A stretch of DNA of 64,000 nucleotides from Laetmonice hystrix (taxonomy: Eukaryota), in the NCBI GenBank assembly GCA_965235115.1, contig OZ249439.1, positions 1,550,001-1,614,000 of the forward strand, in the 5' to 3' direction. The position numbers were made by a program, and so were the translations under genes. Positions within the stretch are counted from its first letter, which is position 1, and each line of letters starts with the position of its first letter. Shown in pieces: positions 1,924-9,681 of this stretch. The notes beneath the pieces are model-generated. The model did no database searches. It was not told the origin of the DNA and worked only from the letters and a program-made list of their open reading frames with translations.

Positions 1924-2760
1924 ATAGTCGATTCGCCCCAGGGCGGTTTCGACCCGGGTCGGTTTCGCCCCACAACCTAGTCGATTCGCCCCACCCCTAG
2001 TCGTTTCGCCCCACTCTCGAAGTCGTTTCGCCCCACACTTGAAGTCGTTTCGCCCCATCGATGATCTCGAAGTTAATTTGCTTCAGCCTAAGTTCTTTAA
2101 CCACACTGGAGCTTTTATAGTTAGTTGGTAGGCTATTACTAATACTGTCAGTCTCGTCTCCATGGGCCTTCGCCGCCACCGGGCCTCGGAGGGGAGAAGC
2201 GGGCTGGGCCGGGACGTCCTGGCACCCATTCGAAGGGTCGGGTGTCCGGGTCGGAAGCGGGGACTGGGTGGAGTGAGGCAGGCCGGTTGCCGGCGGGTGG
2301 CTGCGGCGCATGCAGGCTCACAATCCCGTCTAGGGCACTATAGGCCGATACGGCCTACGCGAACCCGGCTACAGACAGAGCTCCGACGGTCGTCAGCGGC
2401 TCGCTACCCGCTACCCGCTACCCGGCCGCCTGGCTGCCGGGCCGTGGAGGTGGGGAGCCCGGTACGGGCCGGCAGCAGCACGCGGTACAGAGCCGGTACT
2501 AGTTAGCAGCTCGCTCCGGGCCGGACGGTCGGCCTTAATTGGTCCACAAAACGACTTGTTTACTGGACTGGATAGTATCAAGACTCAAGAGACAATAAAA
2601 ACGTAGACTGATAGAATGATAGAGTCAGTTAGCGTCCAGTCTGGACTGGGGCGAAACGACTTTCTGAGTGGGGCGAATCGTCTTCTACCAGTGGGGCGAA
2701 TCGTCTTTCCGAGTGGGGCGAATCGACCGGGGCGAATCGGAAGTGGGGCGAATCGACTAT
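1924..2760. mobile_element. Inverted-repeat element with subterminal arrays of GGGGCGAA(A/T)CG and a GC-rich core
   Basis: atagtcgattcgcccca (1924-1940) is the exact reverse complement of tggggcgaatcgactat (2744-2760). Several tcg(a/t)ttcgcccc motifs lie at 1928-2056 and ggggcgaa(a/t)cg motifs at 2648-2756. Confidence 0.7.
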
Positions 2761-2952
2761 TTACCGACAGAGGCCAGTGCTGGTTACGAAACCCTGGTTA
2801 CGACTGGCACTCAACGTGGTAACGTGTCGATCATGAGTTCAGTTTCTATCTCTCGAGTAACCGAATGGTCTCTTTAGATGCGTATTTTCTCTCTAATAAT
2901 GAGGAAAGAAGAGATTACACTTTAATCTTGCAGATATAGTTACTTTACTCAC

Positions 2953-2989
2953 CAGTCGCACGAGTAAACAAAGTCCTCACAGACGCCAT
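2953..2989 (-). CDS. First coding exon of an unidentified gene, probably a mitochondrial precursor; the rest is unresolved and likely runs off the window start
   Basis: ATG at 2989 gives MASVRTLFTRAT+G followed by a consensus donor GTGAGT. The peptide is Arg/Ser/Thr-rich with no acidic residues, like a presequence. Downstream exons could not be assigned. Confidence 0.45.
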
Positions 2990-3370
2990 GTCGACCTGTC
3001 CGACGACTGCTCGAATGTCCTATACACTGAGGCCCTCTGTCGGAGAGTCACGAACAAATCGTGGCCACCAAGCGGTGACCCCCAGTACCTTCTCCCGGCT
3101 TGGTGGGGTCAAAGCAAAACATTTTAATATAGGCCTAGCGCCCTAAAGGGCCCTCTTAACTCAATAATGCTACGACTATTAATATTTGTGATTGAGAGAT
3201 GAGAAGGCTATATACTTTTATGAGATAAAAGGCCAAAATTGGTTGTATAACCCCTCGGTAAAACGGTAAAACCACGAAACGGAAGTACTCCATGACCATG
3301 CAGTTGTGGCATTCGGTTCACCTCGGAAGCAGTTCTTTCGTTGCTCCCGAGGTGACACATTTAAAATAAA

Positions 3371-6300
3371 ATGGCGGCAAAAGCACTGCAACACGTACTC
3401 GAGCTGCATGTTGAAGTACAAGAGAGATTCAACCAAAACATTCAGCATATAATTGACAAGGTATAATCTTTTTGTTTCTCCCTGTGATGTGTAGAGAGTA
3501 GAGTCAGTAAAGCAGGGCTGCGGTCGGGAGCACCTCATAGACATCACCTAGGCTAGGTTCCAACTTCCAAGTTTCAAGATTTGAAATGCTGCCTGGGAAA
3601 CCAATGCTGGTCATGGGCGGAGCTTGGATTTTTCAATTTTTTTCTGGGGAAGGGCCCCCAGACCCCCCGCCCAAGGTTTCACGCCTTTGGCGCTCCCATG
3701 AAATTGTAGGTCCCGTATGTTCAGTGCCTGTTTTCTTGTGTTGAGTGTTGTGCCTTGCTCTTGCCTTGGCTTGGCCTGGATTAGGCATCCTATGCTAGCC
3801 TTAGGCCTATGGCCGTATGGGATGGCTATGCCCACCTGTCAGATTTTTGTTTAGCTGCCTTACATTTTATTCTGTTTTTTTTTTCAGTACAGTGATCCAC
3901 ATATGCCATCAGATGTAATAAGTCTGGGAGACATGTCAATATGTGAAGACAATGGTAAGAAAACATTCCAGACATGAAGTCAGGGTTTCAACCAGAAATT
4001 TTTTTTTGGGTAGGGACCAATGCATCTGCTAAGGTGCCCACTTTGATGGGGCTCTCGCCCAGAAAAATTTGCATTTTTAGATGTGATTAGACACGTTTTT
4101 CCCAGTGTTGTTTGATTTAAATAATTTGATTTAGATTTAAATCACTGCAAAAAAATCGTGTTTTTTATTTTTTGGCCATTTAAAAACTTTTTTCATATTT
4201 TTCATATTCTATGTGCCACTTGCAGTTTGGATTAACATTTTTATAAATTCTTGCTATACATAAAGTAATTTTGGTTGCAAACAAGGCCCACCTTTTTAAA
4301 TGATTTCGATTTCCCGGTTAATAAACGATGAATCATGATTCTTGACTATGTTAAGCAAAACAATCGGGGAAAATTGCATCAAAATCAAATGTACAGTAAA
4401 GTTTCCAGCGTAAAAAAAAATCTGATTTAAATCCTTTTTTTTTTTAAATTACGATTTTTTCCAACCCTGGTTTTTCCTTCATCTTAAGCAATAGTTGTCT
4501 CATTTCATTTTTGTTCTGATTGAGACAGGTGCTCAGTTTTTGTTTTTTTCTTTTTCAGATAGGCTTTATTTTCAGAAGAGAAGAGGGATACAGTTAAAAT
4601 TTATTTTATTCATGTACTAAACTGCCTAATTGATTTTCATCGAGATGTGGCTGTAATTTGTGGAAATAAATCCTTGCTACGGCAATTAGATGTGGGGGAA
4701 TGACTAGTGGAGTAGTGGTAGGCCTAAAAATGCATATTCCGTTAAAAAATGTCACTTAGTAGCCTGACATTCTAATACTGAAAAAATTATTTATCACAGA
4801 CTTAGTATGTCAACATTGGATTTCAATTCTCCATAACCAAGTGATGTGATGTCATATTTTAGGTGAACTACAGGGAAGGAAAACGTTGCAGATTGGAAAT
4901 GCTCCATTACCAGCCACAGAAGAACACCAGGCATTCTTGGGTAATTTAAAACTTGTTTTTGATTTTTCAGTGTCGTGTCCAGAATCCAGAATGGTACTTT
5001 ACATGTACATTGGATAGCAATGTTTAAGGTTGAATACAATGTTATACATGTATATGACGAGTAGGGTACTAAAGTGACATAATAGGGAGATGAATTAATG
5101 CCAGTGTTGTTAAAAGTATATCAATGTTCATCTTATAACATGACTGTTTCTGTTGACAGCCAAGAATCCACATATGTCTCCTGCCTGGGGATGCTGTATC
5201 CATGCTGATTCTAATGACTCAATAACCTCGGTGAGAATAGTATTTTGAATAGAGGGAAAACCCACATGGCAAATAAGGTTTCATAGACCAAATGAAACAC
5301 CAGCATTTACCTCAGGGCAATAAATGCCACAATTACGTTGTCTGAATGAAGTAATTAATGCCGATGTGTGATGCCTCAGACGTTTACAAACATTTACAAA
5401 GACTGTGACTCCAAACATCGCGTAGACAAGGTCTGTGAGCAGAGTAACACGTAATGTTATGCAATATGCCGTGGTGTGCAGCATTCGGCTCTGATGAATA
5501 CACAAGTAGGAACCAGCGGCGTCACACATCGGGGGGTTACACGTTAATTACTTCATTCAGACAATTGTGGCATTTATTGCCCTGAGGTAAATGCTGATGT
5601 TTCATTTGGTCCACGAAACCTTTTGTGCCGTGTGGGTTTTCCGTCGCTTTAAGGATTTGTCGTTAGAAGCTTTCACCCAGACCTTTTCCACAGTGCTCAT
5701 TAGTTCCTGTAATTTTGTACCGGTAAGTTAGTAAAATAGACCATGACGTAGGCTACTCTGATCTTCTGAAATCATTGGAGAGGGAAGGTGAGGACAGATA
5801 AAAAATATTTAGTTTGTCTGTTATGAAAAAAAAAATTACTTCTTTGATTTCATTACAGCATTTCACAAATGTTTCTGGAAGAAGAATTCACGATGCTATT
5901 TCACCTGATTGTCACAAGGAACCCGAAGAACTAGCAGAGGAATTTGAGAGTAAGATATCTAAAACTAATACTATTACTAGTGAAATGTGTTTGTGTTGGT
6001 CTCTCATTACTTCATGAGAATCTGAGATCGGCATCTTTTAGTATTAAAAAGTCCATTATATAATTTATTGTCATATGAATAAAGCCAAATTTTTACTGTA
6101 TTAAAACAAGACTTTATCGACTTTTATTTTATAATGTATAATCATAACCACTTACCAGGTGAGAATTAGGATTTGGTAAACCAAAAGTAAAGAGTCATTT
6201 AACACGGGTTTTAATGAAGTTAGTAATAATTGACTATTTATTTATAATTCCTGTTCCAGAATTTCTCAGTGAAACCATGTGTCAAGAACTGAGTGATGCG

Positions 6301-9300
6301 GAATCCGTCAGTTTAAAATCTTCAGACACCGATGATGAAAGCAGTGATGATCTCGTGAATTTGTCCTCAGATAGTGAAGAATTTGTAACATTGAATTCAT
6401 CCAAGACAGTTTCCAATGGAGATCACTATTTGAAAGAGGAAACTAGCAACGGAAGTCAAATTTCATGCATTTCTCCAACATCAGATTTCCTTGAGATATC
6501 AAGCTCAGCATCAGATATCTTGGAAACTGGTGAAAGTGCAAACCAGAGCCTATTGAGATCTGTGGGAAATGATGTGAAACAACTTCAGACACAGTCCCTT
6601 GAGTACTGCATCTCCCAAACAGATCAGTCACCACGGACAGGCCAGTCACCATGGATAGGTCAGTCACCACGGACAGGCCAGTCACCACGGACAGGCCAGT
6701 CACCATGGATAGGCCAGTCACCACGGACAGGCCAGTCACCACGGACAGGCCAGTCACCACGGACAGGCCAGTCACCATGGATAGGTCAGTCACCACGGAC
6801 AGGCCAGTCACCACGGACAGGCCAGTCACCATGGATAGGTCAGTCACCACGGACAGGCCAGTCACCACGGACAGGCCAGTCACCACGGACAGGCCAGTCA
6901 CCATGGATAGGTCAGTCACCACGGACAGGCCAGTCACCACAGACTCCAAAGAGGCCGTTGACACAACAAATGTTACTGAGTTCTGGCAATTCAAGCAGAA
7001 AAAAATATGTAGTATTTGCCTCCTCGCCCAAGGTTGTCAATGTTGATACTGGACAAAGGATGGATCGGCTAATCTCTTCACCGGAGCAGCTGTTGTCTAA
7101 AACTAATAAGGAGGTAGACAGGTTTAAAAACGTGGGTTCTTCCAATGTGAAGCATACAGAAAGAACATCACAGAAGTCCATTTTTCACTCAGAAACTGAT
7201 CGAAAAAAAGGGTTCACACATAAAAGCCCAGTTGAAATGAAAGGGTTCGATCAAGTTAGAAGCCCACCAACTTCCAGCAACAGTCTAATACATAGAAGAA
7301 TAGTACCTAGTAGAATAGAAAATTTAGCTGTTGACCACTCCAATGTTGAAATTGTGGTTAATAACAATGATTTTCACTCAAGGCTTCAGAATGGGACCCC
7401 TAAGCCTGGGACAGCTGTGACTCGTGTTCACCCTGAAAGTGCCTATTGGCAAGCTGTTAGTGAAAAATTCCAAAATCTGTCTAAACTGGCGGGGGCTGAT
7501 TCACCTAAAGGATTCTCCAAACTGGCGGGGGCTGATTCACCTAAAGGATTCTCCAAACTCTTAGGCAGGAATATGTCCAAAGGGTTCTCCACAATGGACA
7601 AGACTGATTCACAAAAAGAATTCTCCAAGCTATCAGGCAGTGACACGTCAGTGGAATTCTCTAAACTGGCAGGCTCTTATTCTTCCAAGAGATTCTCCAA
7701 AATGGACTACACTGAAATGTCGGGCAGTGATTCCACAAAGGAATTCTTCAAACTGGATGGCACTGATTCAACCAACAAATATTCCAAACTGGATGGCACT
7801 GATTCAACTAACGAATTCTCTAAACCAGATGACACCGATTTTCCCAAGGTATCCTCTAAATTGTCAGGGAGGGAAATATCCAAGGAATTCTCCAAACTAG
7901 ACAGCAATCATTCACCCAAGGGATTCTCCAAACTTGACAGCAATCATTCACCCAAGGAATTCTCCAAACTTGACAGCAATCATTCACCCAAGGGATTCTC
8001 CAAACTTTATAGCACTGCTTCACCTAAGAGATTGAACAGCACGGGTTTCACCAATAAATTCTCCAGACTGTCGGGTAGTGATATGCCCAAGGGATTCTCC
8101 AAACTGAATGGCACTGATTCACCAAAGGGATTCTCCAAACTGAATGGCACTGATTCACCAAAGGGATTCTCCAAACTGAATGGCACTGATTCACCAAAGG
8201 GATTCTCCAAACTGAATGGCACTGATTCACCAAAGGGATTCTCCAAACTGAATGGCACTGATTCACCAAAGGGATTCTCCAAACTGTTGGGAAGGGACAT
8301 TTCTCAGGAATTCTCCAAACTGGCAGGATCTGATTCACCCAAGGGATTCTCCAAACAGGTAATCTCTGGGGAATCTGAGGAACCATCTATTGGAAAAGTG
8401 GAGAACTACACACCAACCAAAATGGAGATAATAAAAGCAATGAAACGAAAAATAGGTTTCTCGCCTGCCACTCAGGGTGATTTAATGCTTGGGTCAAACC
8501 CATCACCCAAAGGTCCCAACGGGAAGGGAAGACGAAGACGAAGTGAAGCGGTAGATGATGTTGTGGAGTGTCAGAATGAGCAAGATGATGTGCCTAGTAA
8601 TCCTGCAACCAGGAAGGCTGAACGTTCTTTACTGCTTACAGAGGATAATCTCAGAATTCACACACAAATTCTTGACAATCATGTCAACACAAATATAAAT
8701 GTCCATGACTTTTTAATCTCAACTGCCAAGCTGTCACCATCCTCAGAAGCCAGCAGGGTCACTGTCTGTCAGCCCCAGGGTGATCACAACAGGTCGCCCG
8801 GAGCTCAACATACACCCTCCAAACTAGGTCAAGTAGGTTTATCAATCCAAGCAGACCTAGGGGAAGTCAAACCAGCCAAGACACCAAAATCTCCTGACAA
8901 ACGATCTGTATCAGCATCAAAGAAACCTTCACTTGGTCTTGCATGTGAAAAAACAAGCACACCAAGGAAAACAAAAGGCCCCAACCTCAACATAAGTTGC
9001 ATTTCAGTGATCCCACAACAAGCTTCTGTGAACAGTGGGAAGGTCGTCGGACTGAAAACATCATTGGTCCAAGATGCCATTGATTTTTCCTCCAAGATGA
9101 CGGACAATATTTGCCTCGTTCCAGTACTTTCTCCATTAGATAAGAAAAAGTTATATCGTAAATCTGTGAAAAATAAATGTTACATGGATCCATCCACAGG
9201 AGCTTTCAGGAAAGAAAAGAGCCCAGGAAGTTCATTGAAGAATGAGTTAACAAATGTATTGCATGATAGCAGTAGGCCTAGAATAAGACACAAGGAACTT

Positions 9301-9681
9301 CTAACTCGTGAACCTGCACCACAAGTCCATCCGATGAGTCGGCAACTCCAACCCCAGAAAAAATACCAGCGACTTAAATCTACATCCTCTGAAGATGCCA
9401 ATTTAGGGGTTTATAGTCTCAGTGACACGTCCTCGGAAAGTAAAGACTCCTCCAATATAAAGCCAAGTGATGTGACTTTTGTTATCAACAGTAAGAGAAA
9501 GATTAACTATTCACCAGAAAAGGTCAACCCTGTGGGTTCTGCAAAGGACGTTGGAAGCAGCTGGAAGCTTGTGGCTGTAAAACGGGAGAACACTTCGAAA
9601 ACACACCAAGACTCCACAATCTGCCTCGGCCCTGAGCACTGTACAAAATCTTTTTGCTTTGTATGTTCATGTGGAAGTTAG
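3371..9681 (+). CDS. HJURP: Scm3/HJURP-family CENP-A chaperone candidate, 1272 aa, 6 exons
   Basis: Exons 3371-3460, 3888-3954, 4863-4940, 5160-5230, 5859-5949 and 6260-9681 are all GT-AG and phase-compatible (3819 nt). The N-terminus ELHVEVQERFNQNIQHIIDKYSDPHMPSDVISLGDMSICEDNGELQG fits the Scm3 motif (helix-IIxKY...D.(I/V).L...I.EDNG). The C-terminus is CLGPEHCTKSFCFVCSCGS. Family assignment is by motif recall, not a database search. Confidence 0.75.
6625..6948 (+). repeat. Coding 18-bp tandem repeat, (QSPRTG/QSPWIG) x17 plus QSPQTP
   Basis: cagtcaccacggacaggc and cagtcaccatggataggt units lie in frame within exon 6 of the Scm3-like gene. Confidence 0.95.
7477..8358 (+). repeat. Coding 36-bp repeat, about 23 copies of FSKLxGxDSPKG
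   Basis: Degenerate 12-aa units, with five identical FSKLNGTDSPKG copies at about 8095-8275. Confidence 0.9.

What the first reader, a model, noticed from the sequence alone, without database searches (positions are those of the whole stretch)
3371..4940. Scm3/HJURP-type CENP-A-binding domain hidden across three small exons
Seen: exons 1-3 splice in frame to MAAKALQHVLELHVEVQERFNQNIQHIIDKYSDPHMPSDVISLGDMSICEDNGELQGRKTLQIG. None of this appears in the ORF track, which only shows the low-complexity last exon. Known: the Scm3 domain of fungal Scm3 and vertebrate HJURP is an N-terminal helix ending in II/LIxKY, followed by a D-x-(I/V)-x-L strand and an (I/V)-x-(E/D)-x-NG turn. As I recall budding-yeast Scm3, it reads roughly ERH...E....W.NIISKY......GDLVDL.TGEIVEDNGH. 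This protein matches that spacing almost position for position (E, H, E, II, KY, D, L, I, EDNG). Inference: this is an invertebrate CENP-A deposition chaperone. The family diverges quickly and has been hard to detect outside fungi and vertebrates, so the locus is likely annotated as uncharacterised.
Basis: partly seen in the sequence, partly recalled or inferred. Interest (0 to 1): 0.92.

Follow-up and report, generated by a model that had tools for sequence, protein, structure and literature searches.

The report
Protostome HJURP/Scm3 CENP-A chaperone gene
This is a real, transcribed six-exon gene whose first three small exons join to form the Scm3 domain that loads the centromere histone CENP-A; it is a correct reading, but it is an ordinary orthologue of a family that a 2026 paper already showed to be present across animals.

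Summary
Exons 3371-3460, 3888-3954 and 4863-4940 join in frame, with exons 5160-5230, 5859-5949 and 6260-9681, into a 1272-aa protein. All introns are GT..AG. One contig of an exon-only, RNA-like public run carries all five junctions.

The spliced N-terminus hits Pfam Scm3 (PF10384) at 35.1 bits against a cut-off of 24.3, E 1e-8, over profile positions 2-50 of 53. No single exon hits anything, and a six-frame scan of the whole genome with PF10384 finds nothing. The only solved-structure hit is human HJURP. The family hallmarks are present: a 28-residue amphipathic helix ending in K-Y, an acidic and hydrophobic segment after it, and D-N-G-E-L (DXGXL). KY and DXGXL each straddle an intron.

The genome encodes a CENP-A-like H3 variant and has a mir-2 cluster, which marks it as a protostome.

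The novelty claim does not hold. Hollis et al. 2026 (PMC13322267) report Scm3/HJURP orthologues across Metazoa, including a mollusc and an annelid.

The rest of the protein is polar. It carries two lineage-specific tandem S-P repeat arrays and a C-terminal four-Cys motif that is conserved in one related species. The co-fold with CENP-A/H4 could not be run.

The parts
3371..3460 (+). Exon 1 (start codon; residues 1-30). It encodes the amphipathic helix of the scm3 domain and ends in K30 of the KY motif.
   Evidence: The helical hydrophobic moment is 0.50 against 0.19 +/- 0.09 in shuffles. 24 of 30 residues are identical in relative P0003. The exon is single copy in the genome.
3888..3954 (+). 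Exon 2 (residues 31-52 plus the first base of G53). It encodes Y31 of KY, the acidic and hydrophobic segment, and I-C-E-D-N.
   Evidence: Joints 3460/3888 and 3954/4863 are in the RNA-like contig.
4863..4940 (+). Exon 3 (residues 53-78). It completes the D-N-G-E-L (DXGXL) motif. The Pfam match ends at residue 57, which is base 4876.
5160..5230 (+). Exon 4 (no recognised domain).
   Evidence: Joints 4940/5160 and 5230/5859.
5859..5949 (+). Exon 5 (acidic, no recognised domain).
   Evidence: Joint 5949/6260.
6260..9681 (+). Exon 6, including the TAG stop. It encodes about 1140 polar residues that are probably disordered, with 51 S/T-P sites in the whole protein.
   Evidence: The only Pfam hit is a repeat-driven Cementoin match. 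It is 29-31% identical to the relative's ORF P0008.
6625..6944 (+). Tandem array of 17.8 copies of an 18-nt unit, encoding 17 G-Q-S-P-(R-T/W-I) hexapeptides.
7723..8356 (+). Tandem array of about 18 copies of a 36-nt unit, encoding 12-residue repeats around D-S-P-K-G-F-S-K-L. A short related array lies at 7483-7559.
9622..9678 (+). C-terminal C-x5-C-x4-C-x2-C motif (C-L-G-P-x-x-C-T-K-x-F-C-F-x-C-S).
   Evidence: It is conserved at the extreme C-terminus of P0008, although that region as a whole is only about 30% identical. It has no Pfam or PDB match.

Best explanation
The locus is the Scm3/HJURP orthologue of a protostome animal, that is, its centromeric-histone (CENP-A) deposition chaperone. 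Residues about 4-57 form the scm3 domain and are encoded by three small exons. The domain consists of an amphipathic helix of about 28 residues ending in K30-Y31, a short acidic and hydrophobic stretch, and a D-N-G-E-L turn. [quoted passage not shown] That would hold one CENP-A/H4 dimer away from DNA and from tetramer formation until it is delivered to the centromere. The remaining 1200 or so residues are polar and fast-evolving. They probably carry the recruitment, DNA-binding and cell-cycle control functions, through many S/T-P sites, short conserved islands and a C-terminal four-Cys motif. What is shown here is the gene structure, its transcription and splicing, membership of the domain family, single-copy status, and the presence of a CENP-A-like gene in the genome. 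What is inferred is histone binding, specificity for CENP-A over H3, centromere recruitment and phospho-regulation.
For: The gene model has GT..AG introns and is in frame. All five junctions lie in one contig of an exon-only run and are absent from the DNA runs. Pfam Scm3 PF10384 scores 35.1 bits against a cut-off of 24.3, E 1.1e-8, covering profile 2-50/53. Each of the three exons alone gives no Pfam hit at E<=10. The six-frame genome scan with PF10384 gives nothing, so the signal exists only in the transcript-confirmed join. The only PDB hit is HJURP 3r45_C, aligned across R-F..Q..I-x-K-Y..P..V. The hallmarks described in PMC13322267 are a helix of about 25 aa, KY, an acidic and hydrophobic segment after KY, and DXGXL. 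All are present. Exon 1 is 80% identical in a relative, while the C-terminal region is about 30% identical. This matches the reported pattern that only the scm3 domain is conserved. A four-exon H3 variant lies at G000:C1:66479172-66482090 (-). It has a divergent tail and an L1 loop three residues longer than in H3, and its best PDB hit is S. pombe Cnp1. Exon 1 is single copy.
Against: The HJURP match by single-sequence search is weak (E 1.9). No Scm3/HJURP protein from another phylum was retrieved for a reciprocal search. The vertebrate HJURP_mid and HJURP_C domains are absent. The start codon itself is not covered by the RNA-like contig. The library type of run X4 is not on record.
Confidence: 0.88

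Rival explanations
1. The protein has a true scm3-type domain but has been repurposed, or is not the main CENP-A chaperone. It might be a general H3/H4 binder or have a germline-specific role, with another protein loading CENP-A.
For: Binding specificity was not tested. The bulk of the protein is lineage-specific repeats with no similarity to known HJURP regions.
Against: Exon 1 is single copy, and no other scm3 signal was found in the genome, although a six-frame scan is weak for split domains. Across opisthokonts, scm3 proteins co-occur with CENP-A (PMC13322267), and a CENP-A-like gene is present here.
Confidence: 0.06
2. The resemblance is due to chance. On this reading a short amphipathic helix followed by KY, in a long low-complexity nuclear protein, happens to score against a 53-position profile.
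For: The domain is short. The phmmer hits of residues 43-76 to bacterial repeat proteins (P0001, P0004) show that this stretch can attract spurious matches.
Against: The E-value is 1e-8 and the score is 11 bits above the curated cut-off, over nearly the full profile. KY and DXGXL are both at the expected spacing. HJURP is the only PDB hit. The N-terminus is far more conserved than the rest of the protein.
Confidence: 0.04
3. The transcript is a non-functional or decaying gene. It would be spliced, but the long repeat-rich reading frame would not be under selection.
For: The C-terminal region diverges very fast, and the tandem repeat arrays are nearly perfect, which suggests recent expansion.
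Against: The reading frame is 3.8 kb, has no internal stop and spans six exons. The relative has the same architecture, with an intact 1241-aa last-exon ORF and conserved islands and ends. Fast evolution is the norm for HJURP (PMC13322267).
Confidence: 0.02

Closest known systems
Metazoan Scm3/HJURP orthologues described by Hollis et al., Sci Adv 2026 (PMC13322267). Examples are Biomphalaria glabrata KAI8798300.1, Capitella teleta ELT94853.1, Priapulus caudatus XP_014675948.1 and Paramuricea clavata CAB3982230.1.
   Same: It has an N-terminal scm3 domain with a KY-centred motif, a long polar remainder of variable length with no homology outside the domain, and a CENP-A gene in the same genome.
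   Different: Those sequences could not be fetched here, so no direct alignment or tree was made. This species' gene has no named or annotated counterpart in the protein collections searched. It carries two tandem S-P repeat arrays and a C-terminal four-Cys motif, which the parts of the paper read here do not mention.
Human HJURP (scm3 domain solved with CENP-A/H4, PDB 3R45).
   Same: It is the only solved-structure sequence hit. The aligned core is R-F-x-x-x-x-Q-x-x-I-x-K-Y-x-x-P, at 9 of 31 identities. In both proteins the domain sits at the extreme N-terminus of a long disordered protein.
   Different: There is no HJURP_mid or HJURP_C (HCTD) domain. By my own recollection, the segment aligned to the vertebrate T-L-T-Y region reads D-M-S-I. 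D-N-G-E-L follows it, and I recall that form as being closer to the fungal one.
Fungal Scm3 (S. cerevisiae, K. lactis, S. pombe; PDB 2L5A and 2YFV as cited in PMC13322267).
   Same: It belongs to the same Pfam family, PF10384, which it passes above threshold. The DXGXL signature, said to be ancestral to fungi and animals, is present. The title of Folco et al. 2024, cited in PMC13322267, shows that S. pombe Scm3 has a cysteine-rich domain needed for centromere targeting, and this protein also ends in a Cys cluster.
   Different: This protein is much longer. Any homology between the Cys motifs is untested, because that paper is not held. No AT-hook or Myb hits were found.
Drosophila CAL1.
   Same: It is the protostome CENP-A chaperone, now regarded as a diverged Scm3/HJURP orthologue (PMC13322267).
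   Different: CAL1's scm3 region is too diverged for standard searches, whereas this protein passes the Pfam threshold directly. No similarity to CAL1 was tested here.

Membership tests
Scm3/HJURP (Pfam PF10384 scm3 domain) | Profile match above the curated gathering score over most of the domain. | tested here: met
   35.1 bits against 24.3, E 1.1e-8, residues 10-57 on profile 2-50/53. Single exons give nothing.
Scm3/HJURP (Pfam PF10384 scm3 domain) | An alpha helix of about 25 residues ending in the KY motif. | tested here: met
   Residues 4-31 contain no Pro or Gly. Their helical hydrophobic moment is 0.50, reached by 0.16% of shuffles. K30-Y31 are present. The helix is inferred from sequence only, not from a model.
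Scm3/HJURP (Pfam PF10384 scm3 domain) | An acidic and short hydrophobic segment after KY, plus the DXGXL motif (PMC13322267). | tested here: met
   S-D-P-H-M-P-S-D-V-I-S-L follows KY. D51-N-G-E-L55 fits DXGXL and spans the exon 2/3 junction.
Scm3/HJURP (Pfam PF10384 scm3 domain) | A cognate CENP-A (CenH3) is encoded in the same genome. | tested here: met
   A four-exon, 177-aa H3 variant lies at G000:C1:66479172-66482090 (-). Its L1 loop is three residues longer than in H3, and its best PDB hit is S. pombe Cnp1.
Scm3/HJURP (Pfam PF10384 scm3 domain) | Forms the scm3-type helix-strand complex on CENP-A/H4 and prefers it to H3/H4. | not testable with these tools
Scm3/HJURP (Pfam PF10384 scm3 domain) | Localises to centromeres and is required for CENP-A loading. 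| not testable with these tools
   This needs experiments.
Vertebrate HJURP architecture | HJURP_mid and HJURP_C (HCTD) domains downstream of the scm3 domain. | tested here: not met
   hmmscan of the 1139-aa last exon at E<=1 returns only Cementoin. PMC13322267 states that these regions are restricted to vertebrates.
Trappin cementoin repeats (PF10511) | G-Q-D-P-V-K transglutaminase-substrate hexapeptides in a secreted protein with a WAP domain. | tested here: not met
   The 49.9-bit hit is caused by 17 G-Q-S-P-R-T / G-Q-S-P-W-I repeats, which have no Lys. No WAP domain was found. The N-terminus is the scm3 helix, not a signal peptide.

The most novel reading that the evidence does not exclude
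The conserved C-terminal C-x5-C-x4-C-x2-C motif may be a zinc-binding module for centromere targeting or DNA binding. Together with the S-P-K/S-P-R repeat arrays (SPKK-like minor-groove motifs that CDKs could switch off), it could be a metazoan counterpart of the cysteine-rich domain of fission-yeast Scm3. Such a counterpart has not been described for animal HJURPs.
Probability: 0.15. Interest if true: 0.5.

Novelty: new member of a known kind. Interest (0 to 1): 0.3.

Why it matters
The finding gives this genome a correctly spliced, transcript-supported model of its CENP-A chaperone. No named or annotated counterpart of this gene turned up in the protein collections searched. Exon-by-exon scans miss the domain because both hallmark motifs are cut by introns. 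It also adds one more protostome data point to the recent conclusion that Scm3/HJURP is retained across animals. The pair of this gene and the CENP-A gene on contig C1 can be used for centromere mapping in this species, for example by CENP-A ChIP. The pair can also be used to study chaperone-histone co-evolution. It does not change any current view of the family.

Tried and rejected
I did not resend them to any other remote tool and did not split them to get round the rule. There is therefore no structural evidence.

2. The search for homologous proteins with the last exon found nothing, because repeat words swamped the search. With its non-repetitive C-terminal 442 aa it found only P0008, from one related species. 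Searching from P0008 found only P0008 itself.

3. phmmer of the N-terminal 91 aa against 1.84 billion representatives found one true relative, P0003. The six other hits listed are multi-stretch matches to residues about 41-76. The two I inspected (P0001, P0004) are repeat proteins and I judge them spurious.

4. The look-up of encoding contigs for P0003 listed the gene layout but returned no DNA, so exons 2 and 3 of the relative could not be compared.

5. The six-frame PF10384 scan of the genome gave nothing, as expected for a split domain.

6. The Atlas feature search of the C-terminal region returned only sub-threshold resemblance (0.79) to disordered nuclear proteins such as BRCA1 and TICRR fragments.

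7. The PDB search with the C-terminal 60 aa returned nothing.

8. The paper on the S. pombe Scm3 Cys-rich domain is not held.

9. The supplementary tables of PMC13322267 are archives without readable sequences.

10. Recruitment partners in the genome gave only weak exon-level hits. These were a SANTA exon at 26.5 bits, a CENP-C cupin exon at 27.1 bits (below its cut-off of 29), and Yippee/Mis18-family exons that cannot be told apart from YPEL genes. I treat these as context, not evidence.

Full report
**Observation**

The sequence at 3371-4940 contains three short coding segments with canonical splice signals.
- Exon 1 is 3371-3460. It starts at an ATG in the context aaaATGg, 9 nt after an in-frame TAA, and ends before gtataa.
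- Exon 2 is 3888-3954 (ttttcag| ... |gtaaga).
- Exon 3 is 4863-4940 (ttttag| ... |gtaatt).

They continue in frame through exons 5160-5230 and 5859-5949 into the long exon 6260-9681. The CDS is 3819 nt with one terminal stop, and the protein is 1272 aa. In the mechanical ORF list only the last exon stands out, at 1155 aa. The first three exons sit in ORFs of 31, 24 and 28 aa.

**Transcript evidence**

Four public runs of one study hold the last exon. When laid on 3200-9190, three of them (X1-X3) cover exons and introns alike, so they are genomic DNA. The fourth (X4) has depth only in the bins that contain exons. One of its contigs, 414 nt long, carries all five predicted joints: 3460/3888, 3954/4863, 4940/5160, 5230/5859 and 5949/6260, each with GT..AG ends. 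None of these joints occurs in the DNA runs. There are two caveats. The library type of X4 is not on record, and the contig starts at about 3424, so the ATG itself is not covered. The identical N-terminus M-A-A-K-A-L in a related species (P0003) supports the start.

**What it is**

The spliced N-terminal 91 residues match Pfam Scm3 (PF10384) at 35.1 bits against a curated cut-off of 24.3. The E-value is 1.1e-8, and residues 10-57 cover profile positions 2-50 of 53.

As a control, each of the three exons translated alone gives no Pfam hit at all at E<=10. A six-frame scan of the whole 627-Mb genome with PF10384 also finds nothing. The signal therefore exists only in the join that the transcript confirms. 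This validates the domain and explains why it is hidden.

The only hit among all solved-structure sequences is the scm3 domain of human HJURP. The hit is 3r45_C, with residues 17-47 aligned to 27-57 at 9 of 31 identities, including R-F, Q, I-x-K-Y, P and V. The E-value is weak, at 1.9.

**Hallmarks**

Hollis et al. 2026 (PMC13322267) describe the scm3 domain as having four parts: a helix of about 25 residues, a KY-centred motif, an acidic and short hydrophobic stretch after KY that contacts the CENP-A targeting domain, and a DXGXL signature. All four are present here.
- Residues 4-31 contain no Pro or Gly. Their helical hydrophobic moment is 0.50, against 0.19 +/- 0.09 for shuffles, and 0.16% of shuffles reach it.
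- K30-Y31 follow the helix.
- S-D-P-H-M-P-S-D-V-I-S-L comes next.
- D51-N-G-E-L55 fits DXGXL.

KY is cut by intron 1, and DXGXL is cut by intron 2, within the Gly codon.

**Relatives and rate of change**

A full HMMER scan of 1.84 billion representative proteins with the N-terminus found one true relative, P0003. It is exon 1 plus intron read-through from an ENA assembly, and 24 of its 30 exon residues are identical, with all differences conservative. The same 358-kb contig carries a 1241-aa ORF 6 kb downstream, P0008, which is the counterpart of the last exon. P0008 is only 29-31% identical, with many gaps. A few islands are conserved:
- T-P-x-K-x-E-x-I-x-A-M-K-x-K-I
- L-T-x-D-N-L-R-I-H
- T-S-T-P-R-K..I-S-C-I-S-V-I-P
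- L-G-V-Y-S-L-S
- the last 20 residues, C-L-G-P-x-x-C-T-K-x-F-C-F-x-C-S

A conserved scm3 domain on a fast-diverging, polar remainder of variable length is what the 2026 paper reports for animal HJURPs. No named or annotated homologue was retrieved. Exon 1 is single copy in the genome.

**Partner and context**

A Pfam histone scan of the genome finds large tandem arrays of canonical histone genes, an intron-containing H3.3 gene and a frameshifted H3 pseudogene. It also finds one divergent, four-exon H3-like gene at G000:C1:66479172-66482090 on the minus strand (L031 5173-8091). Its 177-aa product has an unrelated Ser/Arg-rich tail. Its L1 loop is three residues longer than in H3 and contains R-W-Q. 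Its best PDB hit is S. pombe Cnp1, marginally ahead of H3. This is the expected CENP-A.

Exon-level hits to a SANTA domain, a CENP-C-type cupin (below its cut-off) and Yippee/Mis18-family domains exist but are weak.

Six mir-2 hairpins above the Rfam threshold lie within 3.2 kb on C7. Another first-stage note calls the genome lophotrochozoan. I did not test that.

**The rest of the protein**

Serine makes up 15.7% of the residues, and there are 51 S/T-P sites, 30 of them S/T-P-K/R. Two tandem DNA arrays encode 17 G-Q-S-P-(R-T/W-I) hexapeptides (6625-6944) and about 18 twelve-residue repeats around D-S-P-K-G-F-S-K-L (7723-8356). The hexapeptides produce a Pfam Cementoin hit, which I regard as repeat mimicry. 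The repeats have no Lys, and there is no WAP domain or signal peptide. No HJURP_mid or HJURP_C domain is found, in line with these being restricted to vertebrates.

**Mechanism**

The following is inferred, by analogy with the Scm3 and HJURP complexes as summarised in PMC13322267. The N-terminal helix binds along alpha-2 of the CENP-A targeting domain, and the following stretch binds along L1. This shields one CENP-A/H4 dimer until deposition. The disordered remainder mediates recruitment, through Mis18-complex and/or CENP-C pathways, together with DNA contact and CDK-dependent timing. None of this could be tested.

**Novelty and verdict**

The reading is right, but the premise that the family is nearly undetectable outside fungi and vertebrates is out of date. 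PMC13322267 (July 2026) reports Scm3/HJURP orthologues in most metazoan lineages. These include a mollusc, an annelid, a priapulid, a flatworm, a cnidarian, a placozoan and a sponge. This protein passes a stock Pfam threshold once spliced. It is a new, unannotated member of a known kind.

The features that might repay a closer look are the conserved C-terminal four-Cys motif and the S-P repeat arrays. A Cys-rich domain is needed for centromere targeting of fission-yeast Scm3, according to the title of a paper cited in PMC13322267 that is not held here.

I put the probability that this is the HJURP/Scm3 orthologue at 0.88, and the interest at 0.3.

Noticed in passing
window 5245-5652 (intron 4): A MITE-like element with 90-nt terminal inverted arms (89% complementary), plus an inner pair of perfect 21-nt arms. 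The word depth in the DNA runs exceeds 100,000, so it is one of the commonest repeats of this genome.
   Followed up: partly
window 3600-3800 (intron 1): A second high-copy stretch, with word depth of 2,000-6,000 in the DNA runs against about 60 for the flanks. It was not characterised.
   Followed up: no
window 6625-6944: Seventeen G-Q-S-P-R-T / G-Q-S-P-W-I hexapeptides give a 49.9-bit Pfam Cementoin (trappin) hit. I judge this to be repeat mimicry, not homology.
   Followed up: partly
window 9622-9678: The C-terminal C-x5-C-x4-C-x2-C motif, noted separately by the first stage (s1-313669), is conserved in the related species' ORF P0008. It has no Pfam or PDB match.
   Followed up: partly
L031 5173-8091 (-) = G000:C1:66479172-66482090: A four-exon CENP-A-like H3 variant of 177 aa. 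It has a Ser/Arg-rich tail and an L1 loop three residues longer than in H3, with R-W-Q.
   Followed up: yes
G000:C4:36.53-36.63 Mb and G000:C20:7.16-7.20 Mb (L001-L027): Tandem arrays of canonical histone genes. The C4 array has a period of about 7.4 kb and at least 13 units with identical H3 and H4 copies. A second array, with a period of about 6-7 kb, lies on C20.
   Followed up: no
L033 (G000:C8:13059615-13059964): An H3-derived pseudogene with a frameshift and a scrambled N-terminal tail. L032 (G000:C1:7.667 Mb) is an intron-containing H3.3-type gene.
   Followed up: partly
G000:C7:14714597-14717755 (-): A cluster of six mir-2 family hairpins above the Rfam gathering score within 3.2 kb, which marks the genome as protostome.
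   Followed up: partly
P0001, P0004: Repeat proteins with units like D-L-L-L-I-E-D-S-A..N-K-K-R-V-Q-V-G-N-L-P match residues about 41-76 of the protein. I judge this to be chance similarity of a short acidic-basic pattern.
   Followed up: partly
window 2162-2822: A G+C-rich stretch just upstream of the gene, with overlapping Arg/Gly-rich ORFs on both strands. It may be a CpG-rich promoter region or a repeat.
   Followed up: no
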